A stretch of DNA of 64,000 bases, taken from the IMG/VR virus record IMGVR_UViG_3300049048_000052, positions 1 to 64,000 of that record; one strand, given 5' to 3'. Position 1 is the stretch's first letter, and each line of letters starts with the position of its first letter. Below, piece by piece: positions 40,247 to 58,043 of this stretch. The notes beneath the pieces are model-generated. The model was given only the letters and a program-made list of their open reading frames with translations. It made no database searches and was not told where the DNA came from. The position numbers were made by a program, and so were the translations under genes.

Positions 40247-40966
40247 ATGGCTAACAACTCTACCTCTTCCTCTATCGTTCGCGCATTCTCTGCTAAGTTG
40301 AACATCTGCCAACGTCGTGCTACGGGTGCTAAGGGCGGTAACCTGGGTACTGTTACCAAGGGCTACATCCGTACCTCTCCTGTTTCCACCTGGATTCAAT
40401 GGTCTCCTATGGAGGGCAACCTGTTCCTGGGTGAGCAAGAGGTAACCCCTCAGCAACTGCATGAACTGTTCCGTTTCCCTAATGGGGTACAGCTGATTTT
40501 CAAGCTTGATCTGAAGAATGTGACGCTCATGCAGGACGGGGCTGTTATCATGCCGCTTGGTTCTGATATTGAGGACCAGAAGGCCAATATGATTGATATG
40601 TTGGATGATACTAGCGTGCAGTCTATTACTGTGCGTTGGACATCTAAGCTTATCTTCAGCCGTAAGCAAGAGGCTTACATCGGGAGTGCTGGTGATCTCC
40701 GCTTGCCTCAGGTAGTTTACATTGAGCAGGCTACTATTGAGCTCAACTCTGAACGTGTAGAGATTGGAGGGGATGCTGTAGAGCATGTGGAACTCATTGA
40801 AGCTATCGCTGCCCTGCAATCTAAGAAGCCTACTCGTAAGGGTTTGGCACGTGTGCAGGAGCGTATGGTGAACATGGATCCAGGAGTTATTACTCCCTCT
40901 AACGTGAGCAGCTTTGCTGAAGGCATGCCTTCCGAATCCCCAGAGGACATCATGAATATGATGTAA
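40247..40966 (+). CDS. Hypothetical protein, paralogue A upstream of RNAP
   Basis: AKLNICQR..G.KGG..WIQW shared with 41030; ends EDIMNMM. Confidence 0.75.
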   Translation: MANNSTSSSIVRAFSAKLNICQRRATGAKGGNLGTVTKGYIRTSPVSTWIQWSPMEGNLFLGEQEVTPQQLHELFRFPNGVQLIFKLDLKNVTLMQDGAVIMPLGSDIEDQKANMIDMLDDTSVQSITVRWTSKLIFSRKQEAYIGSAGDLRLPQVVYIEQATIELNSERVEIGGDAVEHVELIEAIAALQSKKPTRKGLARVQERMVNMDPGVITPSNVSSFAEGMPSESPEDIMNMM

Positions 40967-41029: not shown

Positions 41030-41743
41030 TTGGAGATTCAAATGTACATTGCAACACTCAATATCTGTCAGCGTGGTAAATGGGGATTGAAGGGCGGCAA
41101 GCGTGCCGTCATCACTAATGGTGCCATTATGCGTGGTGAGCCTCGTTGGTGGATTCAGTTCATTCCCACTGATGGCTTCATCTATAAGGATGAGTATCTA
41201 ATCAGTCCTGTAACTGATTGGATGCATACGCTATTAGCTGATGATGAGCTGAGTCTTATGTTCCGGGTTGGTGCCGATAGCGCTGACTTTATTACCCCTG
41301 ATGGTAAGAAGCATATGCTATATAGTCGTGAGGACCAAGAGAACTTCATGCTTGAGGTTCTTGAGGATCCTAGCATCACGGCGATGCGTATCGAGTGGAA
41401 CTGTAAGCTGTTGTTCAATAGCAATACAGACATTACCACTAATGGTCATGAATCCATGGTGGCCGAGATCTGTGAGGCTACTGTATATCTTCTTGAGGCC
41501 ACTCGCTTTGAGAATGATAAGACTGAGGTAGCACCTGAGGAACTGGATGATGCGACTAAGCCATTCTTAGTTCCTAAGGGTGAATCCAAGGGTCTGTCTG
41601 GGGTACAGAATAATCTCAGTCGTGCTAAGCGTAAACGCGCCGAGAGAAAAGAGAGACACCGGGCAGTTAAGGCTGGTACGGTACTGGACGATGATATTGC
41701 TAGTGTAGCTGAGGCTGCAGAGAGCATCATCGATATGATGTAA
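41030..41743 (+). CDS. Hypothetical protein, paralogue B upstream of RNAP
   Basis: ATLNICQR..GLKGG..WIQF; ends ESIIDMM. Confidence 0.75.
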   Translation: MEIQMYIATLNICQRGKWGLKGGKRAVITNGAIMRGEPRWWIQFIPTDGFIYKDEYLISPVTDWMHTLLADDELSLMFRVGADSADFITPDGKKHMLYSREDQENFMLEVLEDPSITAMRIEWNCKLLFNSNTDITTNGHESMVAEICEATVYLLEATRFENDKTEVAPEELDDATKPFLVPKGESKGLSGVQNNLSRAKRKRAERKERHRAVKAGTVLDDDIASVAEAAESIIDMM

Positions 41744-41818: not shown

Positions 41819-44800
41819 ATGTCTGCTATTGACTTCTCTCGTTTGACCGTGCCCGCTACTGCTAGCCAGGAACAGATCAGTGACCTGATCGATTGTCTGG
41901 GTGAGTTAGGTTACCAGGTGGTACCTGGACCTGACTTTAGAGTGGATGCGTCTGATGTCTTTATGCCCTTTAAGGGTGTGGAGACGGATGACGTAGCCTT
42001 GCTGGCTTACGCTCTAAGTACAGTGCTCAGCGGTCTCGGTATTGGTCTGCCTGAAACGGCAGCTGATGAATACGAGGCTGCCGCTGATGTTGATGGCCTG
42101 GTCCAGTATGTCCGGGCTATGTTCGATAACCCTAGTCAAGAGGAAACAATGGAAGAAGTCATTGAAGTTCAGGATCCAACTCCCTCCGTTAAGGTTGTTG
42201 GTTCTACTAAGGAAAACTTGCTCCCTCCAATTGTGTGGGAGAATCGCCCCATCGCTGAGATGAATGATATCATCTGTCGCTCTATGGGCACCAACTGGGA
42301 TAAACCTCTACCTTCTTGGGTACGCCTTGCTACTGCCTTTACGCATATTGGCCGTACTATTCTACCTACTGAATGGTTAGAAGGGGGCCGTATCGACCGC
42401 AGTCATAACTATGTCCGTACTGATGGCCGTTCCATTCTGAAGGCTATGTACAAGTTGGGTGTACCTCTCGTTGGTACCTCTACCAAGGTTAAGTTCTCTG
42501 AAGGTCAACCCATTGAGACTGTGGAACCCTGCCGTTTCAATGTTACCTTCACCACTCGGGATAACACCTACTTCGTTATCCCTGAGATTGAATCTGTTGT
42601 GGATGAAATGCCTCCACTCTTTGATGCAGAGCGTATGTCTCATGGCATGGTTAATTATGTCCATGAGGTAGTAAGTGCACTGGATGATGAGACCCTCCTG
42701 CAATTCTGGGCTAAGTTCATTCCTAACTCTAGTCTCAATGGTCGTGAGCTCACCTTCAGCCCTAGCGGTGTCTCTCAATACACCAATGTAATTGTTCGCT
42801 TGCCTGAGGCTGAGGACGAGCTGATTAGTGTTAGTACTGGTCGCACTCGCTATGTCAATCCTGTAATGGATGTTAGTGGTATTGTTGTATCTGGCCGCAC
42901 CATCCTGACCATGATGCTCATGAGTCTCGTAAATGAGGCCGAGTATTTGATTACTCAATCACGTGTAGATGGATACCTGAACCTGCTCTCTAATATGTGG
43001 GTACCCGCTGAGAATTATGGGGCCTTCAAGAAGAGTGGTGAGGCCATCCATAAAATCTACAACAATAGGGAGCTCCCAGTGGGCATGTATTGCACTCTGG
43101 GTATCCGTTATCCCTTCATTCACTTAGTGAATGTTAGTGCTGCCGCTAATAACGGTATCACTTCCTCTCGTCATATGGTAGAGGAATTCATCAAGAAGGG
43201 TATTGCTGCACTGCCTCACAAATATGGCACCTTTGGCAAGGCTGTCGTATTTGGTGCAGGGGTAAACGCCATGGGTATGGCGATCGCCCGTAATGAATAT
43301 GGCAACTATGTTGTCAATAACCTGGAGACTGATGAAGCATGGCAGCGCATGATCATGCGTACTGTCCTGGATGCATCTAAGCCTTCCAAGTTCTTCAACC
43401 GTCCCTGGACGTTCTTTGGTTCTGTCTTTGCTGATGGTACTGAGGACTTCCCGCTTGAGAAGTCTAAGCTCCATATGATGACCTATCATCCTGTGGATAA
43501 GGAAGGTACCGAGTTTATCAATGAGGCGGTCTATGTTCGCGGTGTGCGTCGTAAGATCTGTTATACCAATAGCCTCCTGACTCATGGCTCTGGTGTTGCT
43601 TCTGTTAACCCCAGCCGCCAAGCCATCCGTTATTCCGTTGGTAAGTCTGAGGCTGATATGATTAATGATTACAGCATCCCTCCTACATTCCGTAAGGTAT
43701 TTGAGAAGGATGCTGAGACTCGTAATGGGGCAGGTATGAACTCTGACTGGCTGCAGATTGTAGCTGAGAAGCTTCAAGAGAAGGCTGATCGTATTGTCGA
43801 TGAGGCCAAGGCCACCGGTAAGGTATTTCATGATGGGGATGTCGTAATGACTCTCTTTGCTGATCTGCCTGATTATAAGCGTGATCTGGTTGTGGTTACT
43901 GCACCTAACCAGGATATCTATCTGGAACGTGCTGAAGTAGTACGTGTGGCAACTACTAATGCTGTACGTGTGCGCTTCTTTACTCGCTTTGAGGGTGAGG
44001 ATTATATCCTTAAGCTGCGGGGTCCCGGTGTTAAGTTCACTACTCAGTTGGATGATATCACTTTCCTGAGTGGTTTCAGTGATTGGGATCTGTTCCTCAA
44101 CATGGAGTGCACTAAGGGCGAACTCGCTCAACTGTACATGTATGCTGAGGCCGTCGGTGAATGTATCTACTATCCTGATACCGGTTTATTGGAGCATGTT
44201 GCTACTGGTAAGGTAGAAGATTTGAAGGATGTTGGCGCTCCTTTCTACAAGTGGGTTGCAGACAATACCGCTAAGGAGGTTATTGAGCGTAAGGTATCCA
44301 AGGAGTACTTGGAATACATTGCCGAATGCCATCCTGGTCTGGTTGCCTTTACTGAGGACGATGTTACCAATAAGTCTGATATTGTTGTCAAGGCTGATCT
44401 GGGTCATGACTATCTTGTCCATGAGACCATCCAATGTCTTGTGGGTGATATGCTCTTCATGGTGGAGATCTCCACTCCTCGTGAGAATACTAGCCCTGCT
44501 GGTCTTACTCTGGAGCAGCTTGCCCTACTCGAGGGTGTCTATGCTGACTTGGCACTGGCATTCATTCACCTGTCTAAGGAGTTCCACTCCGGTATCCAAG
44601 GTATGGCTAAGCTGATCTTGGGTAAGTTGCCCTCTCAGGATCAAGTACCCTACCTTAACCTCATTGAGGCTGGGGATGTAGTAAACCGCGTCTCCCGGAC
44701 CGATAAGGGTATCCTCATGGGACGTCGCCTGATGCAGGCGCTTAAGAAGGAGTTTCCTAAGGGCTTTGTGCTCTTCAGCACTGACAGCTTTGGAGTCTAC

Positions 44801-46660
44801 TATGACTTTGATTCCATGTCCCGCTTTATGGCATTCTCTGGTGAGAGTGGTGCCTCTGGGGCTGCTGCTGATATCTCTCAGCTCTTTCATCAACTGGGTA
44901 TGCCTGCTGATAAGCGTTCTGCTCGTTACTGGCCTGCATCTATCCATGCACTTAACGTCAGTGCTCAGAATCTGATCACCGCTTGGGTTACCCAGATGGG
45001 TGGTGAGGAAGGTAAGGGCAGCAAGGTGCTCTCCCGTTTAGGCCGTACTGCTAAGATTGGCAGCAACCTGAAAGTTAAGACTGTCCATGTTATGGGGGGT
45101 GTTAGCGAAGGTAAGTTCATCACTCGTCCTGCTTATATGCAGGGACTTCCTGTGATGGGCTTGAATCCTAATTGTGCCAGTGTTAAGCGTCTGGGTATTA
45201 AGGCGGGTGATGTAGTCATGGCGGGTCGTACTCCTATGGGCTTCCCTGTCTTCTGCTATGCAGACGTACATCCTTGCTATGCTATTGCACATGGTTACCT
45301 CTTGGCTAACGTCTGGGCCTGGTGTAACGAGGGTGACGGTGATGGTGATCCTATGGCTATCTTCAATGTGACTGGTATCATTACTGAGGATAATCAGTGG
45401 CGTTACAATCGTAAGATTGAGCTGCGTGAGCTGAGCATCAAGGCGGCTGAGTCTGGTGACTTTACCAAGGCTAAGTCTTTAAGCACTCAAGCTGAATCTA
45501 TCAAGGCTCTGCCTCTGCCTACCTATGAGAAGATGGCTGCCCTGAATAAGGGTTATCTCTCTCTCGGTGGTTATGCTGCTATCTATGGTAGCCCTCGTAA
45601 GCATCCCTTTGCTGAGTTCTGTTCTCCTGCTGATAAGTGGTCTAAGAAGCTGCTTAATCTGGATGTGGATAAGATGATGCCTGGGCATTATCCTGCTGAC
45701 GAGAAGGCAATGAAGAAGGCTACTCGTAAGTCTCTGATCACTGATATCCCTGTGATGGACTATCTCAATGCCAATGATGCAGTAGCTAATCACTATCGTA
45801 TCAATGTTGGTATTGGCTACGGGGTTGCCTCTGCTCTGGCATTCCTGTTGGCGGATCGTCGTCGTAAGGCTATCATTGAAGCCAGTAAGAAGGCTATTGC
45901 TGAGGGCCATGATGTAGAGATCTACAATGGCGGTATGCAGCTGTATATTAATAGCGATGAGGCTGATAACTTCATCCGTCTTCAACTGGCTAAGAATGAG
46001 GAGCTGGTTAACCTTACCCGTGGTACGGTATTGGCCTGGCGTATGCTGTATGAAGGCTATGGTCTGGCTGGTGTCTCTGATGAGGCAACCATGGCATTCC
46101 GTATCCTCGATGTAGCGGCTCGTTCTAATGACCGGCGTATTGCTGTAGTTACTGTGGATGGTCAACCGCGCGTTGAGTATCCTAACTTCAAGCCTGAAGC
46201 AGGTACTGTGGCTACTCAGCCTGTGCTGAAGAATGGGGCTGCCTATCTAACTAGCTTCATCTTTGAGAAGTCTCCTGAGCTCCGTCATTCTATGCTCGGT
46301 GGGGTGAATGAGCTTATTCGTGCTCGCTCTCTGACGGTAGCCATCCGCGACATGGAACGTGGTCGTGAGCCTCGTACTATGCGCCATACCACCTTTTCTG
46401 ATGTGGTAATTGCAGGTGCGTCACGTCGTCTGGGTCAGGGTCAGTTTGGTGTGCAAGAGCAGACCGACTTCTCTGATGAGGGGGACAATGAAGCACACTC
46501 CATGTTTGAGCTGTTGGAAGGTATCCGTTGTGCTAATGGTGGTGCTTATCCCGTTCATAGCAACGTGGTTAAGTACTATCTGAGTATTGGTGCCTCCATC
46601 ATGTACAGCATGGAGATGCACGCTAAGACCAAGCGTGCTGAGATGAATCAGGGCTACTAA
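41819..46660 (+). CDS. Single-subunit two-barrel RNA polymerase (YonO/crAss-like, non-virion)
   Basis: GRTP (R1137), then CNEGDGDGDPMAIF (D1173-D1177) matching beta' RxP..NADFDGDQMAVH; K732..K739 in LKLRGPGVKF resembles the beta lysine pair. Confidence 0.85.
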   Translation: MSAIDFSRLTVPATASQEQISDLIDCLGELGYQVVPGPDFRVDASDVFMPFKGVETDDVALLAYALSTVLSGLGIGLPETAADEYEAAADVDGLVQYVRAMFDNPSQEETMEEVIEVQDPTPSVKVVGSTKENLLPPIVWENRPIAEMNDIICRSMGTNWDKPLPSWVRLATAFTHIGRTILPTEWLEGGRIDRSHNYVRTDGRSILKAMYKLGVPLVGTSTKVKFSEGQPIETVEPCRFNVTFTTRDNTYFVIPEIESVVDEMPPLFDAERMSHGMVNYVHEVVSALDDETLLQFWAKFIPNSSLNGRELTFSPSGVSQYTNVIVRLPEAEDELISVSTGRTRYVNPVMDVSGIVVSGRTILTMMLMSLVNEAEYLITQSRVDGYLNLLSNMWVPAENYGAFKKSGEAIHKIYNNRELPVGMYCTLGIRYPFIHLVNVSAAANNGITSSRHMVEEFIKKGIAALPHKYGTFGKAVVFGAGVNAMGMAIARNEYGNYVVNNLETDEAWQRMIMRTVLDASKPSKFFNRPWTFFGSVFADGTEDFPLEKSKLHMMTYHPVDKEGTEFINEAVYVRGVRRKICYTNSLLTHGSGVASVNPSRQAIRYSVGKSEADMINDYSIPPTFRKVFEKDAETRNGAGMNSDWLQIVAEKLQEKADRIVDEAKATGKVFHDGDVVMTLFADLPDYKRDLVVVTAPNQDIYLERAEVVRVATTNAVRVRFFTRFEGEDYILKLRGPGVKFTTQLDDITFLSGFSDWDLFLNMECTKGELAQLYMYAEAVGECIYYPDTGLLEHVATGKVEDLKDVGAPFYKWVADNTAKEVIERKVSKEYLEYIAECHPGLVAFTEDDVTNKSDIVVKADLGHDYLVHETIQCLVGDMLFMVEISTPRENTSPAGLTLEQLALLEGVYADLALAFIHLSKEFHSGIQGMAKLILGKLPSQDQVPYLNLIEAGDVVNRVSRTDKGILMGRRLMQALKKEFPKGFVLFSTDSFGVYYDFDSMSRFMAFSGESGASGAAADISQLFHQLGMPADKRSARYWPASIHALNVSAQNLITAWVTQMGGEEGKGSKVLSRLGRTAKIGSNLKVKTVHVMGGVSEGKFITRPAYMQGLPVMGLNPNCASVKRLGIKAGDVVMAGRTPMGFPVFCYADVHPCYAIAHGYLLANVWAWCNEGDGDGDPMAIFNVTGIITEDNQWRYNRKIELRELSIKAAESGDFTKAKSLSTQAESIKALPLPTYEKMAALNKGYLSLGGYAAIYGSPRKHPFAEFCSPADKWSKKLLNLDVDKMMPGHYPADEKAMKKATRKSLITDIPVMDYLNANDAVANHYRINVGIGYGVASALAFLLADRRRKAIIEASKKAIAEGHDVEIYNGGMQLYINSDEADNFIRLQLAKNEELVNLTRGTVLAWRMLYEGYGLAGVSDEATMAFRILDVAARSNDRRIAVVTVDGQPRVEYPNFKPEAGTVATQPVLKNGAAYLTSFIFEKSPELRHSMLGGVNELIRARSLTVAIRDMERGREPRTMRHTTFSDVVIAGASRRLGQGQFGVQEQTDFSDEGDNEAHSMFELLEGIRCANGGAYPVHSNVVKYYLSIGASIMYSMEMHAKTKRAEMNQGY

Positions 46661-46704
46661 TCTGATCTAGTAAGGGGGCCTACGGGCCCTTTTACTAGTG
46701 TTTG

Positions 46705-46881
46705 ATAGGGCAGCGAAAGCCATATAACATGAAGGAGCGGTAATCCTCTAGTGAGTGTCGGTTAAAGGTTATAGAACCGAAGGAGCGGTCCCGTAAGGGA
46801 TGCAGCGAAAGGTGACTAGGCTGAAGGAGCGGCTTACTATGATTATGCAGCGAAAGTGTTATAGGTGAAGGAGCGCCTATT
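46705..46881 (+). ncRNA. Candidate structured RNA with tandem bipartite motif GCAGCGAAAG..TGAAGGAGCG
   Basis: Motif A at 46710, 46802, 46847; motif B at 46730, 46779, 46822, 46866; GTAA tetraloop hairpin; ends can pair. Confidence 0.55.
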
Positions 46882-47014
46882 ATTCATTACTCCCTATCTT
46901 TTTGGCCAGCCGGTTTGATATGGTGTTATGGATTATCTTGTACTATCTACTTTCACCTACTTAGATGACTATCTAGGTCTATCCACTTTGACTAAGTAGG
47001 ATTGTAGGGGGTTT

Positions 47015-47299
47015 ATGCCTGAAGATAACTCACTTCTTAACCAGTGTGGCGTAGAATGGCGTTCATTCGTTATTGGATGCTATGCTAGCGATTCCTATGT
47101 TCTTGATATCTGTCTCTATCCTATAGGGGACATTATGATGATCCAGATTGATTATGACTTAGGTCTTATCTGGATAGTAATGGAGTCACCAACCACTTTT
47201 GTGTGGAAGGAGGTGGTGTATCAGGAGGATATAAGAGGGACATCCCCTTTGGTAGCCTATGAGCACTATCTAGAGTACAGATCTACTCTCACTAGATAA
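47015..47299 (+). CDS. Hypothetical protein
   Basis: ORF with GGGG SD-like sequence. Confidence 0.5.
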   Translation: MPEDNSLLNQCGVEWRSFVIGCYASDSYVLDICLYPIGDIMMIQIDYDLGLIWIVMESPTTFVWKEVVYQEDIRGTSPLVAYEHYLEYRSTLTR

Positions 47300-50857: not shown

Positions 50858-50929
50858 ACAGGATTAGTTCAGTGTTAGCAGAACATCCCCTCTAAAGGGA
50901 CAAGATAGGTTCAATTCCTATGTTCTGTT
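50858..50929 (+). tRNA. tRNA with CUA (amber) anticodon, atypical
   Basis: TCCC-CTCTAAA-GGGA anticodon arm (4 bp), ATAGG-TTCAATT-CCTAT T arm; D loop lacks GG. Confidence 0.65.
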
Positions 50930-50940
50930 ATACCCTACTC

Positions 50941-51009
50941 ACAGACCTAACTCAAGTGGAAGAGTACCCACATTGTCGGGTAGTATGGGTTCGAATCCCA
51001 TGGTCTATA
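50941..51009 (+). tRNA. Degenerate tRNA-like gene
   Basis: ACTC/GAGT D arm and ATGGG-TTCGAAT-CCCAT T arm intact; anticodon arm irregular. Confidence 0.6.
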
Positions 51010-51042
51010 ATTGTCCACTTAAATTGATTAAAGGAGTCTGTC

Positions 51043-51501
51043 ATGGTTACTACTCAAGAATTAGAGGCCGCAGGAGTGCAGGTTCACACTGCAGAGGCTA
51101 AAGTCCTCAATACCTGCCCTCATAATATCAACATCTTCCCTGAAGATGCCTTCATTAACCTGAAGCAGATCAACCCAACAACCTGGGTGGCCGATGGGGT
51201 TAAGGAAGAAGCACCGCTGTTGGCTTTCTATCCTTCAAGTGGTTCCAGTCTGCGCATTGGAGTAGAGTCCAAACCTATCGGCTCCATTGCTGGTGTTCCC
51301 TGTTACCGGGCAGTATATGGTGAGCTCTCTGGTCTCCCTGAGGAAGAGTATGACGTGATTATCACATCTCTTCCTGCGGTCAGCAATGCTAAGCTCAAGG
51401 GTCTGGCGATCGCTGAGAAGCTATGCTCACCTCATCAAGTGGTGCGTCTCTCAACTGATACCAGTGTCATCCTCGGCTGTACTGGGTTACAGTTCCAGTA
51501 A
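51043..51501 (+). CDS. Conserved-looking phage protein (NTCPHNINI..GLP..VR..ILGCTGL)
   Basis: AGGAG SD; the pattern recalls a widespread uncharacterised phage family. Confidence 0.65.
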   Translation: MVTTQELEAAGVQVHTAEAKVLNTCPHNINIFPEDAFINLKQINPTTWVADGVKEEAPLLAFYPSSGSSLRIGVESKPIGSIAGVPCYRAVYGELSGLPEEEYDVIITSLPAVSNAKLKGLAIAEKLCSPHQVVRLSTDTSVILGCTGLQFQ

Positions 51502-51519
51502 TTAGCCCTTAAGTGGGTA

Positions 51520-51591
51520 GCAGATATAGCTCAAAGGTAGAGCATATGGACGTTTGTTCATAAGATGTAGGTTCGACCCCTACTATCTGCT
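51520..51591 (+). tRNA. tRNA-like gene with 8-nt anticodon loop (Asn GTT-derived?)
   Basis: GCAGATA/TATCTGC acceptor, GCTC-AAAGGTA-GAGC D arm, loop ACGTTTGT, GTAGG-TTCGACC-CCTAC T arm. Confidence 0.7.
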
Positions 51592-51623
51592 TTGTTAAAC
51601 ATATTGATTGAAGGGAGTCCGTT

Positions 51624-51941
51624 ATGAAGGTTGATTGTTTACCTGGGTTCACATTAAGGGATGCTGTAGCTGGAGAGGATCAGTCCTTTAGCGTAGAGCA
51701 AGCTATGAAGGTGCTACATCCTCGTATATTTGAGCTATTGGTACAGAGTGTAGAACACACAAGGAAGAGGGCCCTGGAGAATGAGGTGAACTGGGCAGGC
51801 CTAAGCCCGTATGTGAGAGTGGAGATGCTTAAGGGTTTCCTTGCCTCACGTATCTCTGTCCTATTAGATATGGGAGTGGATCCTAGTGGGGCCCTGCCTA
51901 TCATCTGCTTCGTTGTGGCCTGGGTTGAGGATGTGGAGTAA
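51624..51941 (+). CDS. Hypothetical protein
   Basis: GGGAG SD. Confidence 0.6.
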   Translation: MKVDCLPGFTLRDAVAGEDQSFSVEQAMKVLHPRIFELLVQSVEHTRKRALENEVNWAGLSPYVRVEMLKGFLASRISVLLDMGVDPSGALPIICFVVAWVEDVE

Positions 51942-51979
51942 TCCACCTATTGTTAATAGCTATATACAAGGAGATGACC

Positions 51980-52222
51980 ATGAACCTAGAAGCACGATAT
52001 CCACAACACTGCCCTCATGATGGGGCAGTGATTGATCCTGATGGATCAAAATGTTATCAGGGTGAGGAGATCTGGGATATCTTCCCAGCTGATAATCCTA
52101 TGGCTGACTCATTGTACCAAGCGTCCTCCGCCTGGTGTGTAAGGAATAATGTGGCCATGCTGGTGGCTGATGATTATTCAAGTCCTGAGGACTATGGGTA
52201 TCCTGATTCTGACCTTCGTTGA
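51980..52222 (+). CDS. Hypothetical acidic protein
   Basis: AGGAG SD. Confidence 0.6.
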   Translation: MNLEARYPQHCPHDGAVIDPDGSKCYQGEEIWDIFPADNPMADSLYQASSAWCVRNNVAMLVADDYSSPEDYGYPDSDLR

Positions 52223-52230
52223 GGTATAGT

Positions 52231-52422
52231 ATGCCAACGTTTGAGGAATTCAAAGCAATGGTGAGGGCCCACTTGAAACAGGAGGGTCTATGGTCTGAGG
52301 ATATGGAGGCTGGCTTCAGTGAAGATAGTCAGGATGTAGGCTACCGGTGCTACCAACTAAGGTGGGGTAATATCAATTTGGCCTATAACCAAGTCTCCGA
52401 TAAGATAGACTTTGTGGAGTAG
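52231..52422 (+). CDS. Small acidic protein, paralogue 1
   Basis: FEEFKAMVR..EGLWSEDME..FSE shared with 52425. Confidence 0.65.
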   Translation: MPTFEEFKAMVRAHLKQEGLWSEDMEAGFSEDSQDVGYRCYQLRWGNINLAYNQVSDKIDFVE

Positions 52423-52424
52423 CC

Positions 52425-52631
52425 ATGCTTAGCTACGAGGACTTTCAGTCTATTGTCCGTCAGGATATGATGGACCAGGGTAGATGGAGTGAGGATCTAG
52501 AGTCTTGTTTCAGCGATCTCAGTGATATGGTAGGGCATCCATCCTATCAGTTCTATGCGCCCAATGTAGCATCAGCTATGTATGGGTATGACCGAGGTAT
52601 ATGGTTGTATGGTGAACCTGGAGGAGATTGA
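52425..52631 (+). CDS. Small acidic protein, paralogue 2
   Basis: YEDFQSIVR..QGRWSEDLE..FSD. Confidence 0.65.
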   Translation: MLSYEDFQSIVRQDMMDQGRWSEDLESCFSDLSDMVGHPSYQFYAPNVASAMYGYDRGIWLYGEPGGD

Positions 52632-52996
52632 TTATGCGTTTGTTCCTTTGTTTAGTGTTGGGTGCCCTGTGTGCTCCTATGTTACCTGTTGCACCTACAT
52701 TAGCCGGTGCCTTCCCCTGTGAGACTAACAAGACCCTAAAGCAGTTCAACTATGTGTGGGTGGGTCTGGGTACTAGTAAATGGGAGAGGGTAGAGGCTGC
52801 GGTGATGAAGGCCTTTGATAGACGCTTCCCTGATGCCACTAACCGACCCAGTGTGGCCTACTGTTCTCGTACAGTAGACGGACTAGCATTCTATAACTTT
52901 GCCAGTGCAGCAGAGCGAGTAGAATGGGAGTCCATTGCTCATCGGGCTGCTAATAGTGTTGAGCAGGGTACACCTGTTCTCAACATTCGTCATTAG
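52628..52996 (+). CDS. Secreted/signal-peptide protein
   Basis: MRLFLCLVLGALCAPMLPVAPTLA signal-like N-terminus. Confidence 0.6.
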   Translation: MIMRLFLCLVLGALCAPMLPVAPTLAGAFPCETNKTLKQFNYVWVGLGTSKWERVEAAVMKAFDRRFPDATNRPSVAYCSRTVDGLAFYNFASAAERVEWESIAHRAANSVEQGTPVLNIRH

Positions 52997-53053
52997 TTTG
53001 GGGGGAGGCCCCTTGGTCTCCTTATTCATATTAGATATACATAGGGGAAACTA

Positions 53054-53350
53054 ATGGAAAGTCCAGCAAGTATTACTGTCTCTGCCTCCTGGCTCTTCAG
53101 GAGCAAAGCTGTCAGCATGTGGAGTACTGACTTCGAAGAGACTGCTGAGTATGTCATGCTTAGCTCTAGTAAGGGGGTATTCCAGTTACTCAAAGATGGT
53201 AAGATCTGCGATGTAGAAGAAGTATTCAATAGCCGTCCTGGAACTGCCCTGTATAAGGGTAGTGTCTATAAGATTAAGTCTGGGTACTTCTTTGTTGGAG
53301 TTGCAGAGGGGGAGGGTATTGAGACCCCTGTTCTATTGATTGTGGAGTAA
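53054..53350 (+). CDS. Hypothetical protein
   Basis: ORF with GGGG SD-like sequence. Confidence 0.55.
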   Translation: MESPASITVSASWLFRSKAVSMWSTDFEETAEYVMLSSSKGVFQLLKDGKICDVEEVFNSRPGTALYKGSVYKIKSGYFFVGVAEGEGIETPVLLIVE

Positions 53351-53357
53351 TCCACGG

Positions 53358-53432
53358 GCCCACCATGCATATATGGATAATGCACTACCTCTGAACAAGG
53401 TAGGTTTTCAGGTTCGAATCCTGAGGTGGGCA
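53358..53432 (+). tRNA. tRNA-Phe(GAA)-like, atypical (C37, 6-bp anticodon stem)
   Basis: GCCCACC/GGTGGGC acceptor, CTACCT-CTGAACA-AGGTAG, TCAGG-TTCGAAT-CCTGA. Confidence 0.75.
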
Positions 53433-53980
53433 TAGACTGATAGGGAGGAACGGGCCTTGAGCCAACGTATTCCTATTAGTTGAGGGTGGTAAGGACCCTA
53501 CGATGGTTCTTATTGCTCAAGCCTAGGTCGTAGTGACGTACTTCCTAGCTAGGCCCAGTAAAGTTTGCTAGGTTTGATAAATGGGTCGAAGTACAAACCT
53601 AACTGCAGGGATATGCCGCCCTGTTAGTCTTTGACGGGGGAAACCCGCATTGAGTAGTACAACCAAGTAGGGAGCACCACCCCCTAGGAGGAATAGGCAA
53701 GGTATACGTCTGCTCATATCTATTGTGGTGATAGGTATGGGCGCATGGTCCCTACGTTAAGGGGTACCACTCTCTTGATGAAGAGACGTTTCCTAGTTCG
53801 TAAACTAGGTGGTGGAGTGCCTTCCGTGGGGACGCTGTTCTCATTGGCTAGTGCCCCTCAGGTCTACTATGGGAAACCATAGGGTAGCTATAACCTTGAC
53901 GATACTCGAAAGAGTTGGGGCAGGGCTATGGACTTATTAGCTACAAGTACAGAGGGGAAGGGGTCATAGCCTTCCCCTAT
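53433..53980 (+). ncRNA. Candidate large structured ncRNA (about 550 nt) downstream of tRNA
   Basis: ORF-free, GC-richer; about a dozen hairpins including GAAA-capped stems and a terminal AGGGGAAGG/CCTTCCCCT stem. Confidence 0.65.
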
Positions 53981-54110
53981 AATTAAAACTTATAAATAAT
54001 TAGAAAGTCTTTGTCTTGACCCTATAGGAAAAAGTTGCCTTTATCTCTTAAATGAGGTAAATCATAGGTAACTATACCTAATAAATGAGCTCCATCAATA
54101 AGTAGAGCTT

Positions 54111-54467
54111 ATGGATATGAAGGATAGAGACAATGATAGGGTGAGTCAGGAATGGGCCACAAGGTTAGTACTATTGAGAGATGGTATTAGTATTAGGCCC
54201 ATAGATGTATTAACCGGACCCAATAGGGAATGGAATCCTGCTGTATGGAGAGCACTGGAGAATAGGATAGATGGTAGTGGTGTGGTCCTAATGGACTGTG
54301 TCGTATCGTTTATGGATGCCTGGTGTGAGAAGTATAGTGAGGATGAGGTGGCTAACCTAAGAGCTATGGGGACTGTGATGACCCCTACTTTAGGTGAAGG
54401 ATGGTATGAGTGCCAACTATGGTGCCATCTCATCTTGAAGGCGGGTGATGTATTTAAGTTCCTATAG
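54111..54467 (+). CDS. Hypothetical protein
   Basis: ORF track. Confidence 0.55.
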   Translation: MDMKDRDNDRVSQEWATRLVLLRDGISIRPIDVLTGPNREWNPAVWRALENRIDGSGVVLMDCVVSFMDAWCEKYSEDEVANLRAMGTVMTPTLGEGWYECQLWCHLILKAGDVFKFL

Positions 54468-54597
54468 ATAGAGAGGGATTGGTTGAGATAGTGTATCTTA
54501 TTTAGGATGATGGGGTGTATCCCTCCACTTCATCATCCTAATTCTTCTTTAAATTGAACTTTACCCTTTTAACCTATTGATTGATGGAGAAGTACGT

Positions 54598-54855
54598 ATG
54601 AGCAGTAAGACTCAGAGTGCAAAACTAGACGCTAGTAACTATGAGCTAGTAATGAACTCTTGGGTGCCAGGGCAGCCTGCCACTCGTGTATGGAAGGGAC
54701 CCGATGGTACTGAGGTAGAGATTCAGCAACAACTGAATCAGGTCCAGGTGAAAGTTAATGGTAATAAACTCAGTATCCCTACTCGTGTGACGACTGAGTT
54801 ACCAGAGCTTATGAGATCTTACAAAGCAGCATTTGAGAATGCCCTGGGGGATTAA
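54598..54855 (+). CDS. Hypothetical protein
   Basis: ATG after GGAG. Confidence 0.55.
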   Translation: MSSKTQSAKLDASNYELVMNSWVPGQPATRVWKGPDGTEVEIQQQLNQVQVKVNGNKLSIPTRVTTELPELMRSYKAAFENALGD

Positions 54856-54941
54856 TGGTGGTAGCAAGACCAGTTCTAAGGGGGCGGCCCCCTGATCATA
54901 CTCCTGAGCCCCCTCGTATTTTACAGGGGTTCAGTAGAGAT

Positions 54942-55451
54942 ATGAACCTATTTACTAGTATCTTCATTGATGCTGGTAATATGTTTCATGCTCAGCAGAA
55001 GCAGGGATGGTTCTTCGATCCTAAGAAGATCATTAAGTACGCTGTACCTGACGAACATTATCTAGTGAATGCTTGGTGGCATACTGCCATTAAGGATGAA
55101 CAGGATAACATTCTGTTCAGGGATGCTTTAACCTCCATGGGTTATAGTGTTATGACTAGACCCCTTAAGGAGTACTATGACCCTCGTCGTGGTATCACTA
55201 CCCAACACGGCAATTGCGATGTGGATATCGTAATTGATATGGTGAATACATGGGGGCAATATCAACATGCGGTGGTCTTTACAGGTGATGGTGACTTCCT
55301 TTATGCATTTGAGCAGATGCATGAGAGGAACATAAAGGTAACGGTGGTAGGTGCAGAGGGTATGATATCTAGGGACCTACGGAGTGTGCCCTGGATTAAC
55401 ATTGTATACCTGGACCAAATAAAGGAGCATATTATCAAGATTCGGTACTAA
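54942..55451 (+). CDS. NYN-domain (LabA/DUF88-like) protein
   Basis: IFIDAGNM, CDVDIVIDM, VVFTGDGDF, VTVVGAEGMISRDLR motifs; WFFDP..LKEYYD is typical of cyanobacterial LabA-family proteins. Confidence 0.88.
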   Translation: MNLFTSIFIDAGNMFHAQQKQGWFFDPKKIIKYAVPDEHYLVNAWWHTAIKDEQDNILFRDALTSMGYSVMTRPLKEYYDPRRGITTQHGNCDVDIVIDMVNTWGQYQHAVVFTGDGDFLYAFEQMHERNIKVTVVGAEGMISRDLRSVPWINIVYLDQIKEHIIKIRY

Positions 55452-55659
55452 GGCTGGAGGGGGTAGTTACCCCCTTCATACTTGTTGTCTACTTAATTGA
55501 ATAACCATGGTGGTAGGTAAACCACCTAAGAGAAAGCTTCCTGGGGGTCTCTGCCTCATTAGTGGTGATCATAGTCACCATAAGCTCTTAGCCGGTGTGT
55601 TGAGAGGTTAACAGAGGGCAACTCAAACAAACCCTAGTCAATTAAAAGAGGACAAGACA

Positions 55660-56289
55660 ATGACGAACCAAATGCCTGCACAACAAGCTGTACAGAACGT
55701 TGGCTACACCAACGAGTTCGATAGCCTGGACAACTATGCCCCCGGTCAGATCTTCCGTGTGGATGCCTATCTGATTGATACCAAAGGTGATGCTGCGAGC
55801 AACAGTATCCTGCGGATGTATCCTGTGGCTCCCTCGCACATCGATCCCCGGTTGGTCCTGTCCGTTGTGCCTATCTACATCACCTGCACCGTTGAAGAAT
55901 GGCGTCAACGCAATAACTATGAGGACGGGGATACTATCTCCCTCTTCGTACGTAAGGGCACCATCAATGCCCGTGTTGACCTGGCTTCTCCTGCTGCCGT
56001 CCAGAAGGAAATGAAGCGTCTGGGTTACACCGACGTCAATCAGTTCCCCTACTACCCCGTGCGTATCAAACCTCAGAATGAGGAGACCAAAGGCATGACC
56101 GAGGAAGAACTGAAGGTCCGTGCTTACACTGCGGTGAACGGTAACACTGTTCGTACTGCTCAGCGGCAGGGTCTGAAGGGTGAACAACTGGTGGCTGCGG
56201 TGGCTCAGCGGGATACTGTGGCTGCCCAAGAGAAGGGTGTCAAGGCTGCACTGCTTGGTGTGATGAACCTCGCTAAGTCGATGTTCTAA
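55660..56289 (+). CDS. Highly expressed hypothetical protein, possibly OB-fold
   Basis: Extreme host-like codon bias; beta-rich core; GAGGA SD. Confidence 0.7.
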   Translation: MTNQMPAQQAVQNVGYTNEFDSLDNYAPGQIFRVDAYLIDTKGDAASNSILRMYPVAPSHIDPRLVLSVVPIYITCTVEEWRQRNNYEDGDTISLFVRKGTINARVDLASPAAVQKEMKRLGYTDVNQFPYYPVRIKPQNEETKGMTEEELKVRAYTAVNGNTVRTAQRQGLKGEQLVAAVAQRDTVAAQEKGVKAALLGVMNLAKSMF

Positions 56290-56354
56290 CGGTTAGGTAA
56301 ATAGATGGGGGCCCTTCAGCCTCCATCTATTTATTCTAATTAACTGGATTGACA

Positions 56355-56723
56355 ACAATGATTGACGTAAGAAACGTAGAGACCACTGGCACGATTAAAG
56401 AAGAGTATGAGTACTACGTAAGATGTAGACTCTTATTTCCTGTACTCAGGTCAATGGTTGAGGATTGGGAGGCCCTACAGGATGAGATGGTAATCATCAT
56501 GGAGAGCCAGGGTATATATGGATTAATTATAGAAATGAGTAGGCCCACTAGGGCTGAGATCTCCAAACACAGGGAGGTATGTAAGTTATTAGTAAATTAT
56601 ATACAAGCTGGTGACCCTACCTTAGAGGTCCTATTAGATGATGATCTAGTAGAAGAGGCAGAATCATTTGCCTCCACTCTAATGGTAGATCGTTTGGAGA
56701 GACTCCTACAAAAGAACATATAG
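56355..56723 (+). CDS. Hypothetical protein
   Basis: ORF track. Confidence 0.55.
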   Translation, partial: TMIDVRNVETTGTIKEEYEYYVRCRLLFPVLRSMVEDWEALQDEMVIIMESQGIYGLIIEMSRPTRAEISKHREVCKLLVNYIQAGDPTLEVLLDDDLVEEAESFASTLMVDRLERLLQKNI

Positions 56724-56755
56724 TTCAAAACTGCATTGAAGGGAGTTCCTGTACT

Positions 56756-57475
56756 ATGAACGAGATACCATTGGGTACGGATGCTAAGGGGGTGTATTAC
56801 TGGTTAGTTCAGACTAAACAGGGTGTTAAGGTTATGGCTAGAGACCGTAAGGGTAATGTGAAGGGGGCTGAGCATGTGCCCACTGAGTTACTCAGTGGAG
56901 GCTTAAGGCTACAGGATCTAACTACTAGGGCACAAACTCTGTGTGACTCTCTCTATGAGAGTGACGACTTCTATAGCATGGCCAAGGAGGTCCTAAAACT
57001 AGATACAGCAATCCGTGCTGAGCTAGGGTTAGATCGTGCACCTAATATCAGGGATACCTATAAAGCGGCCCTTGAGAAGGTACGAACTGTAGCCATGCAC
57101 CTTCTGGGTATTGCTATCACTAAGGGTATTGCTAATGAGACGGGCTGCGGGGATATGGAGAAGATGCTGAGGTGTCATAAGAGTCTATTGGCACTCACAG
57201 ATAATCTAAAGGGCTTCTCTCCTCCCTTAGACCCAGATTTGATTCAAAAGTATCTGGCATTCTTATCCGGTATTCGGGATAAGATTATCGACTGGGTTGA
57301 CATACCTCTGTCCCCAGATGAGAAAGTACAGATAAGGGAGATACTGAAGCAGTACATCAGACTGGTAGGTGTCCTTGCCCAAAGGAACAATGCGGTGAAT
57401 CAACACCAGGTTGAGTACCGTTGGGTTAAGGAATACATAGAGAACGGTGGGGATATTAACCAGATCCCCTTGTAA
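56756..57475 (+). CDS. Hypothetical helical protein
   Basis: GGGAG SD. Confidence 0.6.
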   Translation: MNEIPLGTDAKGVYYWLVQTKQGVKVMARDRKGNVKGAEHVPTELLSGGLRLQDLTTRAQTLCDSLYESDDFYSMAKEVLKLDTAIRAELGLDRAPNIRDTYKAALEKVRTVAMHLLGIAITKGIANETGCGDMEKMLRCHKSLLALTDNLKGFSPPLDPDLIQKYLAFLSGIRDKIIDWVDIPLSPDEKVQIREILKQYIRLVGVLAQRNNAVNQHQVEYRWVKEYIENGGDINQIPL

Positions 57476-57587
57476 TCAGAATAGTGGAGCTTTAAGGAGC
57501 CCTTGGTATGAGAAGTGATGCTCTTATACCATAAAGTGAGTAGAAGGGTTTAGCATCAACTCTTCTTCTACCTCTTAATGAGGTATA

Positions 57588-57661
57588 GCTATAGTGGTGT
57601 TTGGAGAACACATGGGTCCGAATGTGGACTCAGGAAGCGGGTGCGACTCCCGTCTATGGTT
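57588..57661 (+). tRNA. tRNA-like gene with 7-bp anticodon stem and 6-nt loop
   Basis: GCTATAG/CTATGGT acceptor, TGGGTCC-GAATGT-GGACTCA, GCGGG-TGCGACT-CCCGT. Confidence 0.55.
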
Positions 57662-57751
57662 ATTGACCCAAACGTACCCTCCTAGGACTAAAGGCCAGGG
57701 TCCCTTCGGGGACCTAATATTTATCTGTGGTTTAATTGATTAAGGGAGTTA

Positions 57752-57946
57752 GTGATGGCACTAGATAAGATTGCTGAGGCTGAGAGTCTATTAGCACGGG
57801 CTAATGAATTGCAGGTACATGCTAATGCTTTACCTGATAGAGTGAGAAACCTGAAGGCGCATGCTTTAAAGATTCTAGAGACGGAGTATGTAGCTCTGGG
57901 TTTACAGATTGAAGCTCTGAGAAAGCAGTTGGGTAAGGATGGGTAA
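57752..57946 (+). CDS. Small coiled-coil protein
   Basis: GGGAG SD. Confidence 0.55.
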   Translation: MMALDKIAEAESLLARANELQVHANALPDRVRNLKAHALKILETEYVALGLQIEALRKQLGKDG

Positions 57947-57970
57947 CACCGTTCTAACTGATTGATACAA

Positions 57971-58043
57971 CCAAGGTTGGCCGAGCGGTTGAGGCAGCAA
58001 ACTCATAATTTGCCCTAGGCAGGTTCAACTCCTGCACCTTGGA
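57971..58043 (+). tRNA. tRNA-CAU (Ile2 or Met), canonical
   Basis: CCAAGGT/ACCTTGG, GCAAA-CTCATAA-TTTGC, GCAGG-TTCAACT-CCTGC; no encoded CCA. Confidence 0.92.

What the first reader, a model, noticed from the sequence alone, without database searches (positions are those of the whole stretch)
46705..46881. Tandem array of a bipartite motif (GCAGCGAAAG..TGAAGGAGCG) right after the RNAP gene
Seen: three full units and one partial unit with a 44-48 nt period, fixed 9-10 nt variable spacers between the halves, a GNRA hairpin linker and pairing ends. The halves resemble the paired T-loop strands of RNase P (GCAACAGAGAG / GGUGAAAGGGUGCGG) that clamp the tRNA elbow. Inference: an RNA with multiple T-loop modules (tRNA or protein sponge), or DNA iterons. 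Too short and irregular for CRISPR.
Basis: partly seen in the sequence, partly recalled or inferred. Interest (0 to 1): 0.7.

Follow-up and report, generated by a model that had tools for sequence, protein, structure and literature searches.

The report
Phage RNA hairpin with repeated kink-turn-like loops
The "tandem motif" is best read as a roughly 190-nt structured RNA just downstream of a jumbo phage's RNA polymerase gene: a long hairpin whose conserved half-motifs face each other across the helix to form three or four identical internal loops that fit the kink-turn sequence rules. This looks like a new, so far very rare, phage non-coding RNA, and its function is not known.

Summary
GCAGCGAAAG occurs 3 times and GAAGGAGCG 4 times within 170 nt, and nowhere else in the 252-kb phage genome.

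The main result is that the "variable spacers" are complementary to each other. The + strand folds into one long hairpin (46696-46889) in which every A half lies opposite a B half. This gives four 7x6 purine-rich internal loops, one of them degenerate, separated by helices of arbitrary sequence.

Supporting evidence:
- The fold is strand-specific: 10 G-U pairs, -58.5 kcal/mol on the + strand against -33 on the - strand.
- It is far more stable than versions with only the spacers shuffled (0 of 300).
- The only close relative found (polymerase 49% identical) has the same element at the same place, with identical loops and different but still pairing helices.

By published sequence rules each loop reads as a standard Kt-7-type kink-turn, and the loops are arranged in dyad pairs one helical turn apart. 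The upstream gene is a two-barrel RNA polymerase.

The T-loop/tRNA-sponge and DNA-iteron readings are not supported. There is no Rfam match and no transcription data. The function, probably a multivalent protein-binding or architectural RNA linked to the polymerase or the early region, is inferred.

The parts
41819..46660 (+). Upstream gene: 1613-aa two-barrel (YonO/QDE-1/P23-45-like) RNA polymerase
   Evidence: DGDGD Mg-site motif at residues 1173-1177. Invariant K732, K739, K766 and DxDGD across 40 homologues. AF2 model of residues 640-1500 has pLDDT 90. The best PDB fold match is the P23-45 gp96 RNAP, followed by E. coli beta', Pol I and QDE-1. ESM Atlas features score 0.95 to PF05183 RdRP clusters. 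There is no Pfam hit by sequence.
46667..46698 (+). 14-bp GC-rich hairpin followed by a U-rich stretch; looks like an intrinsic terminator
   Evidence: I1. The equivalent hairpin is present in L139 (10127-10161) and in L204.
46696..46709 (+). P1, 5' strand of the basal helix; pairs with 46876-46889
   Evidence: MFE. L139 has the same 14-step helix with two double-sided compensatory changes (worked out by hand).
46710..46719 (+). A1 half, the bulged strand of loop I; lies opposite B4
46719..46730 (+). P2, 5' strand (spacer 1); pairs with spacer 4 (46856-46866) to give 11 bp plus one bulge, closed at both ends by G-U
46730..46739 (+). B1 half, the non-bulged strand of loop II; lies opposite A4
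46740..46758 (+). P3, 5' strand (linker 1); pairs with linker 3 (46832-46846)
46759..46768 (+). Degenerate A2 half (loop III, opposite B3). The G at the first G-A position is U, so the kink-turn signature is lost. The equivalent loop is intact in L139.
46767..46778 (+). P4, 5' strand (spacer 2); pairs with spacer 3 (46811-46822)
46778..46787 (+). B2 half (loop IV, opposite A3). It starts with C instead of U, which keeps the closing pair as C-G.
46788..46801 (+). Apical hairpin GUCCC-GUAA-GGGAU, the C helix of loop IV
   Evidence: In L139 it is GUCUCUC-UUU-GAGAGAU.
46802..46811 (+). A3 half (loop IV)
46811..46822 (+). P4, 3' strand (spacer 3)
46822..46831 (+). B3 half (loop III)
46832..46846 (+). 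P3, 3' strand (linker 3)
46847..46856 (+). A4 half (loop II)
46856..46866 (+). P2, 3' strand (spacer 4)
46866..46875 (+). B4 half (loop I)
46876..46889 (+). P1, 3' strand
46886..46896 (+). Conserved 3' tail AUUACUCCCUA, followed by a U run. Its first four bases close P1.
   Evidence: Identical 11-mer in L139 at 10370-10380. UACUCCCUAAG is present in L204 and Ma-LMM01, and UAAUCCCUAAG in L203. It is not a dispersed motif in this genome.
47015..47299 (+). First downstream ORF (94 aa, no known family). It is not conserved in the relative.

Best explanation
The element is a structured RNA of about 190 nt, read from the + strand (the sense strand of the flanking genes). It lies between the terminator-like hairpin of a phage two-barrel RNA polymerase gene and a block of small, unconserved genes.

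It folds into one long hairpin. The helices are built from the 'variable' spacers and linkers. Each conserved A half (bulged strand) lies opposite a conserved B half (non-bulged strand), which produces the same internal loop repeatedly.

Read by the published rules, each loop is a standard simple kink-turn of the Kt-7 type:
- C helix ending in G-C and C-G;
- three-nucleotide bulge AGC;
- tandem G.A and A.G pairs;
- A.G at position 3b:3n.

The loops come in dyad pairs. Their non-canonical sides face each other across an 11-12-bp helix.

The most likely mode of action is a multivalent, shape-defined RNA. The repeated identical loops would be docking sites for several copies (or dimers) of one protein, phage or host. 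Alternatively they would bend the hairpin into a compact body. Its action would be tied to the polymerase gene or to the start of the early-type gene block.

Shown: the repeats, the strand-specific fold, its conservation in a second phage, the fit to the kink-turn sequence rules, and the polymerase identity.

Inferred: that it is transcribed, that the loops really kink, that a protein binds, and what the biological effect is.
For: Structure in the window:
- The spacers pair with each other and every A half faces a B half in the MFE fold.
- Shuffling only the variable segments gives -43.5 +/- 4.1 kcal/mol against -58.5 for the real sequence; 0 of 300 shuffles reach it.
- The - strand folds to only -33 kcal/mol, with z -0.45 against -2.69 for the + strand. 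Ten of the pairs are G-U.

Conservation:
- The only close relative of the polymerase (49% identity) carries the element at the same position.
- Its loops are identical: A/B loops at 10187/10351, 10239/10306 and 10286/10259.
- Its helices are different but still pair, with z -6.1. The spacer-only shuffle gives z -5.0, 0 of 300.
- The closing pairs change in a pair-preserving way: C-G to U.G, U.G to U-A, and U.G to C-G.

Kink-turn rules:
- The definition and rules are taken from PMC5061560 and PMC8191799.
- -1b:-1n = C:G, 1b:1n = G.A, 2b:2n = A.G and 3b:3n = A:G are met in 6 of 7 loops.

Other points:
- The element is single-copy in the genome.
- It is linked to the polymerase gene rather than to the downstream genes, which differ between the two phages.
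- There is no Rfam match in either phage.
- Precedent for a bacterial non-coding RNA kink-turn recognised by a dedicated non-L7Ae protein: OLE RNA and OapC (PMC9723947, listed).
Against: - Only two sequences exist. Column-wise covariation on the alignable apical domain is therefore weak: 84% of cells pair against 30-50% when the partners are slid, but there are only 2 double-sided changes, and 131 of 500 shuffles do as well.
- There is no RNA-seq evidence. No RNA run was listed, and the DNA runs are soil metagenomes.
- A terminator-like hairpin lies immediately upstream and no convincing promoter was found, so it is unknown how, or whether, the element is transcribed.
- The loop has two extra purines on the non-bulged strand and an A.A at 4b:4n, which is not textbook kink-turn.
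- No L7Ae, fibrillarin or CsrA gene is present in the phage, and no partner protein was identified.
- The complex prediction was not run by the tool.
- More distant relatives lack the A/B loops.
Confidence: 0.55

Rival explanations
1. A cis-acting mRNA element rather than a protein-binding RNA. It could be a compact, nuclease-resistant 3' end or second terminator for the polymerase transcript. Or it could be a 5' leader of the downstream gene block, whose four Shine-Dalgarno-like AAGGAG sequences and CUCCC tail attract or sequester 30S subunits or mask the next gene's ribosome site.
For: - Each B half contains AAGGAG.
- The conserved tail CUCCCUA is complementary to UAGGGGG just before the ATG at 47015 (read by eye).
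- A U run follows the hairpin, and a terminator-like call overlaps its 3' end at 46861-46880.
- In Ma-LMM01 the genes after the homologous polymerase-like gene are the early class (PMC5780444).
Against: - Simply exposing a Shine-Dalgarno sequence would not need the opposite strand (GCAGCGAAAG) to be invariant in six loops across two phages.
- The downstream genes and their start regions are not conserved between the two phages.
- The tail is not clearly complementary to the ribosome site in L139 or L204.
Confidence: 0.2
2. A DNA-level repeat array: iterons of a replication origin, or tandem promoters or sequence-specific terminators recognised as double-stranded DNA by the phage polymerase or another phage protein.
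For: - Repeat-rich intergenic DNA after the polymerase-like gene is common in the wider family: 6.7 perfect 42-bp repeats plus two copies of CAGCGAAT...TAGCGG in Ma-LMM01, and triplicated motifs in L203, L204 and L208.
- YAGCGAA recurs in Ma-LMM01 and L206.
- P23-45 has a conserved 26-nt motif at the terminators of its virion polymerase (PMC10770324).
Against: - The halves are direct repeats but the spacers are inverted complements, which a double-stranded DNA site does not need.
- The pairing holds on one strand only, because of 10-12 G-U pairs.
- The motif occurs once per genome, unlike a promoter or terminator consensus.
- Helix lengths are kept while the sequence is not.
Confidence: 0.12
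3. One reading: each bipartite unit is a pair of T-loop strands like those of RNase P, the T-box or the L1 stalk, and the RNA clamps tRNA elbows as a tRNA sponge.
For: There is only a recalled sequence resemblance. A tRNA gene cluster lies 4 kb downstream, so tRNA biology matters to this phage.
Against: - The two halves of one unit do not face each other. Each A half pairs off with the B half of a different unit.
- The U of the B half is in a closing base pair and changes to C while keeping the pair. Position 5 of the putative T-loop is G.
- There is no hit to RNase P, T-box or any other Rfam model.
Confidence: 0.04

Closest known systems
Standard simple kink-turn, H. marismortui Kt-7 type (Huang & Lilley, PMC5061560; rules in PMC8191799)
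   Same: Watson-Crick C helix ending in C:G at -1b:-1n, a three-nucleotide bulge, G.A then A.G immediately 3' of it, and A:G at 3b:3n. The non-bulged strand reads GGAGC, as I recall Kt-7 does. The rules predict folding in Mg2+ alone and the N3 conformation.
   Different: 4b:4n would be A.A. The non-bulged strand carries two further unpaired purines before the closing G-U. Kinking has not been shown. No L7Ae-family protein is encoded by the phage.
Archaeal box C/D sRNA (C/D kink-turn plus C'/D' kink-loop)
   Same: The order along the strand is the same: bulged half, fixed-length spacer, non-bulged half, loop, bulged half, spacer, non-bulged half. This gives two kink-turn-type motifs with their non-canonical sides facing each other across a spacer of fixed length (own knowledge of box C/D architecture).
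   Different: There are no RUGAUGA or CUGA boxes. The spacers pair with each other instead of serving as free guides. There is no L7Ae or fibrillarin in the genome and no Rfam snoRNA hit. The context is a bacterial virus.
OLE RNA kink-turn bound by OapC (PMC9723947), and kink-turns found in bacterial intergenic RNA motifs (drum, HOLDH, RAGATH-18, Actinomyces-1; PMC8191799)
   Same: Bacterial or phage-context non-coding RNAs of unknown function in which a kink-turn was recognised from sequence and serves as a protein site or architectural element.
   Different: Those RNAs carry one kink-turn each. This one has three or four identical copies in dyad pairs, and there is no sequence similarity to any of them.
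Multi-site protein-sponge RNAs (CsrB/RsmZ type) and 6S RNA
   Same: A small RNA carrying many copies of one short motif (GGA-containing). It is a rod-like RNA of about 185 nt next to transcription machinery.
   Different: The motifs are two-stranded internal loops, not hairpin-loop GGA. There is no CsrA in the phage, no large central bubble, and no Rfam 6S or CsrB hit.

Membership tests
Kink-turn (standard, simple) | Duplex with a bulge of (usually) three nucleotides whose 5' side is a Watson-Crick C helix | tested here: met
   In the MFE folds of both phages the pairs G1-C8 and C2-G7 (plus U.G or U-A beyond them) precede the unpaired A3 G4 C5. The definition comes from PMC5061560. This is a predicted secondary structure only.
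Kink-turn (standard, simple) | G.A and A.G pairs at 1b:1n and 2b:2n, immediately 3' of the bulge | tested here: met
   G6 and A7 on the A strand face A6 and G5 on the B strand in 6 of 7 loops. The degenerate loop III of the window has U at 1b. This shows sequence compatibility only; the sheared geometry was not observed.
Kink-turn (standard, simple) | Folding rules: -1b:-1n = C:G and 3b:3n not Watson-Crick (A:G is the best folder) | tested here: met
   -1b:-1n is C:G in four of the six intact loops and U:G in two L139 loops. 3b:3n is A8:G4. The rules come from PMC8191799.
Kink-turn (standard, simple) | Tightly kinked axis (about 50 degrees included angle), or binding by an L7Ae-class protein | not testable with these tools
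   The complex-prediction job with A. fulgidus L7Ae was accepted but not folded. No 3D RNA tool is available.
   U0 of the B half pairs with G10 of an A half from another unit, and changes to C while keeping the pair. Position 5 is G. The definition is from my own knowledge.
Box C/D sRNA | C (RUGAUGA) and D (CUGA) boxes, unpaired 10-12-nt guides, and L7Ae/Nop5/fibrillarin partners | tested here: not met
   There are no such boxes and no Rfam hit. The spacers are self-paired. PF01248 and PF01269 are absent from the phage genome.
Iterons / double-stranded DNA repeat array | Whole units repeated in one orientation, with no need for complementarity between units and no strand bias | tested here: not met
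   The spacers are inverted complements while the halves are direct repeats. The folding energy is -58.5 on the + strand against -33 on the - strand.
Rfam families (all 4227) | Covariance-model score at or near the gathering threshold | tested here: not met
   Over the element itself the window gives no hit at E <= 10, and L139 gives only an 11-bit ZEB2_AS1_2 chance hit (E 6.3; gathering score 70). The only other hits lie beside the element: OmrA-B at 14.5 bits (window 46905-46985) and two miRNA models below 19 bits (L139 10423-10477).
Two-barrel RNA polymerase (for the upstream gene) | Two double-psi beta-barrels, invariant lysines in one and DxDGD in the other; fold match to known enzymes | tested here: met
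   The Foldseek global TM-scores are low (0.13), but the top hits are RNAPs (8h2m at E 1.5e-4). Atlas features point to PF05183.
Intrinsic terminator (hairpin 46667-46698) | GC-rich stem followed by a U tract | tested here: met
   Consensus scan only.

The most novel reading that the evidence does not exclude
A bacterial-virus counterpart of the box C/D design: an RNA built from dyad pairs of kink-turns held one helical turn apart. It would recruit dimers of a so far unrecognised phage (or host) kink-turn-binding protein, forming a new ribonucleoprotein. That particle would control the phage's own two-barrel RNA polymerase or the switch to early gene expression. More distant relatives would carry lineage-specific versions of the same idea, such as the repeated GAAA/GAUUA loops of L204.
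Probability: 0.15. Interest if true: 0.85.

Novelty: new variant of a known kind. Interest (0 to 1): 0.62.

Why it matters
If it is real, this is a previously undescribed phage non-coding RNA. It has no Rfam match. Searches of IMG/VR, one genome per prokaryote species, part of the JGI metagenome set and 5.8 billion proteins turned up only two examples.

Its architecture would be unusual for bacteria: several identical kink-turn-type loops in symmetric pairs. To my knowledge, arrays of kink-turns with fixed spacing are otherwise known from archaeal and eukaryotic box C/D particles.

It sits beside a poorly known class of phage single-chain two-barrel RNA polymerases, shared with Ma-LMM01-like cyanophages. 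In Ma-LMM01 the equivalent spot is the border of the early gene cluster. The RNA is therefore a concrete handle on how these phages organise early transcription or host takeover.

It is also a natural test case for the kink-turn folding rules, and a possible part for RNA nano-design.

Tried and rejected
- Tandem Repeats Finder finds nothing, because the array is not a simple tandem repeat.
- Rfam gives no family in either phage.
- Exact and relaxed DNA pattern scans gave only single, chance matches, mostly inside coding sequence. I checked them for clustering of halves. The scans covered IMG/VR, metagenome contigs (cut off at 120 hits, so not exhaustive) and GTDB genomes.
- Protein-guided locus searches in IMG/VR found nothing.
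- blastn against phage records gave no match.
- A covariance model of the apical domain found nothing in seven more distant relatives or in Ma-LMM01.
- Sequencing runs are soil DNA only, with identical sequence, so there are no variants and no RNA.
- L7Ae, fibrillarin and CsrA are absent from the phage genome.
It then accepted the window RNA with archaeal L7Ae but did not fold it, so this gives no evidence either way.
- The structure prediction of the conserved ~240-aa neighbour family failed. Pfam, PHROGs, a homologue search and the Atlas give nothing for it.
- I considered a resemblance of the loop strands to the ribosomal protein L1 binding site (recalled from memory). I could not verify the reference sequence from the paper I read, so I dropped it as untested.
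- Hammerhead, CRISPR, small-ORF and sarcin-ricin (loop E) readings were rejected by inspecting the sequence.

Full report
WHAT IS THERE

The window is the first 64 kb of a 251,780-bp IMG/VR virus record, a jumbo phage held by soil metagenome runs.

The finding lies in a 354-nt gap between two + strand ORFs: 41819-46660 (1613 aa) and 47015-47299 (94 aa).

- GCAGCGAAAG ("A") is exact at 46710, 46802 and 46847. A degenerate copy lies at 46759.
- GAAGGAGCG ("B", usually preceded by U) is exact at 46731, 46779, 46823 and 46867.
- The spacers are 9-10 nt, and a GUAA-capped hairpin sits in the middle.

Neither the bipartite pattern nor the A core occurs elsewhere on this strand in the whole genome. 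This is therefore a single-copy element, not a dispersed promoter or terminator consensus.

THE KEY POINT: THE SPACERS PAIR

- Spacer 1 pairs with spacer 4.
- Linker 1 pairs with linker 3.
- Spacer 2 pairs with spacer 3.
- The stretch between B2 and A3 is a hairpin.

The + strand therefore folds into one long hairpin, 46696-46889. In it each A half lies opposite the B half of a different unit: A1/B4, B1/A4, A2/B3 and B2/A3. The conserved halves are direct repeats, while everything between them is an inverted repeat. That arrangement points to a single-stranded fold with non-Watson-Crick internal loops. It is not expected for double-stranded DNA binding sites.

Two controls support the fold.
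- Shuffling only the variable segments, with the eight halves held in place, gives -43.5 +/- 4.1 kcal/mol against -58.5 for the real sequence. None of 300 shuffles reaches it.
- The complementary strand reaches only -33 kcal/mol, with z -0.45 against -2.69. Ten of the pairs are G-U and would be A/C mismatches on the other strand.

The folded strand is the sense strand of both neighbouring genes.

A SECOND EXAMPLE

Among 5.8 billion proteins the polymerase has one close full-length relative, P0002 (49% identity). It lies on a 27.9-kb Logan contig (L139).

Directly after its stop codon L139 has the same layout:
- a terminator-like hairpin;
- a long hairpin with three A/B loops (A at 10187, 10239 and 10286, opposite B at 10351, 10306 and 10259);
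- the same 11-nt tail, AUUACUCCCUA.

The loop nucleotides are identical to the window's. The helices have different sequences and partly different lengths, but they still pair. The fold has z -6.1, and the spacer-only shuffle gives z -5.0 with 0 of 300.

Changes in the closing pairs preserve pairing:
- C2-G7 becomes U.G;
- U.G9 becomes U-A9;
- U0.G10 is C-G in one window loop.

The number of loops is not fixed. L139 has a plain helix where the window has loop II. The window has a decayed loop III (U in place of the first G of the G.A pair) where L139 has an intact one. The loops therefore behave as modules.

With only two sequences, column-wise covariation is weak. 84% of cells pair against 30-50% for slid partners, but there are only two double-sided changes and 131 of 500 shuffles do as well. 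The case rests mainly on the two independent thermodynamic tests and on the placement of the loops.

WHAT THE LOOPS LOOK LIKE

Number the A strand G1 C2 A3 G4 C5 G6 A7 A8 A9 G10, and the B strand U0 G1 A2 A3 G4 G5 A6 G7 C8 G9.
- G1-C8 and C2-G7 pair, with a U.G9 or U-A9 pair beyond them.
- G10 pairs with U0.
- This leaves a 7x6 purine-rich loop.

Read against the definition of a standard simple kink-turn (PMC5061560), the fit is:
- C helix ending in C:G at -1b:-1n;
- bulge A3 G4 C5;
- G6.A6 at 1b:1n;
- A7.G5 at 2b:2n;
- A8.G4 at 3b:3n.

The published rules (PMC8191799) state that -1b:-1n = C:G and 3b:3n = A:G favour folding in metal ions alone and the N3 conformation.

The fit is not perfect. 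4b:4n would be A.A, and two more purines of the B strand (G1, A2) have no partner before the closing G-U. I could not test the three-dimensional shape; the complex-prediction job was not folded.

The loops occur in dyad pairs (I+II and III+IV in the window; III'+IV' in L139). Their non-canonical sides face each other across a helix of 11-12 positions in all three cases. From my own knowledge, this strand order is the same as in box C/D sRNAs (bulged half, spacer, non-bulged half, loop). Here, however, the spacers pair with each other. The boxes are absent, and the phage has no L7Ae or fibrillarin.

THE T-LOOP IDEA

In the fold the two halves of one unit do not interact. The U of the B half is in a base pair that tolerates U-to-C, and the would-be fifth position is G. 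No RNase P, T-box or other Rfam model matches. I regard this reading as not supported.

CONTEXT

The upstream gene is a two-barrel RNA polymerase.
- It has DGDGD at residues 1173-1177.
- A profile search found 146 representative homologues.
- In a 40-sequence alignment three lysines and DxDGD are invariant.
- An AlphaFold model of residues 640-1500 has pLDDT 90.
- Its best PDB match is the P23-45 gp96 polymerase, followed by bacterial beta', Pol I and QDE-1.
- Language-model features point to PF05183.

Ma-LMM01 gp064 is a 25%-identical homologue. It too is followed by terminator hairpins, two copies of a CAGCGAAU...UAGCGG unit, the motif UACUCCCUAAG and 6.7 perfect 42-bp repeats. The genes that follow, gp063 to gp054, are the phage's early class by RNA-seq (PMC5780444).

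Other distant relatives also have long, repeat-rich or structured intergenic regions after this gene. A covariance model of the apical domain finds no A/B loops in them.

One of them, L204, has a + strand-specific fold: z -5.6 against -1.0 for the - strand. It carries its own repeated internal loop, GAAA opposite GAUUA, twice.

Between the window and L139, the two ~240-aa paralogous genes upstream of the polymerase are conserved. L139 has a third paralogue right after the RNA. The other downstream genes are not shared. The RNA therefore travels with the polymerase module.

HOW IT MOST LIKELY WORKS

Six loops are identical across two phages whose neighbouring protein has diverged to 49%. The helices between them are free to change, the spacing is kept, and the number of modules varies. 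This pattern is what one expects from repeated docking sites for one protein, with the dyad arrangement suggesting dimers. It also fits an RNA whose shape is set by repeated sharp bends.

I therefore commit to a multivalent, kink-turn-type architectural or protein-binding RNA attached to the polymerase/early-region module (confidence about 0.55 for the whole statement). Within that:
- that it is a structured RNA element: about 0.8;
- that the loops are true kink-turns: about 0.45;
- that a protein binds them: about 0.4.

Transcription, the partner and the biological effect are inferred, not shown. No RNA run holds the sequence. A terminator-like hairpin sits just upstream, and no convincing promoter was seen.

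RIVALS

- A purely cis-acting mRNA element: a 3'-end stabiliser or second terminator, or a leader using its four AAGGAG sequences and CUCCC tail (0.2).
- A DNA-level array (0.12).
- The T-loop/tRNA sponge (0.04).

NOVELTY

There is no Rfam family and no described phage RNA of this design that I could find. Kink-turns in bacterial non-coding RNAs are known singly: OLE with OapC (PMC9723947), and drum, HOLDH and RAGATH-18 (PMC8191799). I rate this a new variant of a known kind, of moderate to high interest. The rating is limited by there being only two examples and no expression data.

Noticed in passing
window 50858-58043: ARAGORN calls five tRNA-like genes on the + strand, 4-11 kb downstream. 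One has a CUA anticodon (it would read UAG; labelled Pyl) and two are odd calls with a two-base 'tt' anticodon. This may hint at stop-codon suppression or recoding in this jumbo phage.
   Followed up: no
window 40247-40966 and 41030-41743; L139 2096-2818, 3564-4325 and 10541-11269: A family of ~240-aa paralogues with no known domain flanks the polymerase gene in both phages. L139 has a third copy immediately after the RNA element. They are candidate partners of the polymerase or the RNA. No homologues were found outside these two phages, and the structure prediction failed.
   Followed up: partly
L140 (Ma-LMM01) 7290-7756: After the homologous gp064 there are two ~33-nt direct repeats (GACAGCGAAUG..UAGCGGCGG), the motif GUACUCCCUAAGG, and 6.7 perfect 42-bp repeats each containing CCACUCCCC. 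The next genes (gp063-gp054) are the early cluster by published RNA-seq. This stretch shows no significant fold (z about 0).
   Followed up: partly
L204 5618-5800: A distant relative has a + strand-specific structured region after its polymerase-like gene (z -5.6 against -1.0). It contains a different repeated internal loop (GAAA opposite GAUUA, twice, plus a third similar one) and ends in GUACUCCCUAAG. This suggests lineage-specific versions of a repeated-loop RNA.
   Followed up: partly
window 46886-46896; L139 10370-10380; L204 ~5781; L140 ~7382; L203 ~4826: The motif UA(C/A)UCCCUA(AG) marks the 3' edge of the structured region in five phages of this family. It resembles the 3' end of 16S rRNA (anti-Shine-Dalgarno). 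In the window it is complementary to UAGGGGG just before the ATG at 47015. Its role is unknown.
   Followed up: partly
window 46700-46710 and 46913-46923: A direct repeat, GTTTGATAGGG / GTTTGATATGG, brackets the hairpin and its tail at a distance of 213 nt. It could be a trace of duplication or insertion, or chance.
   Followed up: no
window 46956-47000: The inverted repeat CCTACTTAG ... CTAAGTAGG (9 bp, 27-nt loop) lies just upstream of the ribosome site of ORF 47015.
   Followed up: no
window 16633-27786: A 3717-aa ORF matches only phrog_31006 (unknown function). Giant proteins fused to virion polymerases are known in other phages (PMC10770324). I did not examine whether this one carries a polymerase or tape-measure part.
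   Followed up: no
L205 2043-4148: A very close relative of the polymerase (P0003, 629 bits over 334 profile positions) sits on a 4.1-kb ENA contig. The gene appears split into two ORFs there, and the contig ends before the 3' flank, so a third copy of the RNA could not be checked.
   Followed up: partly
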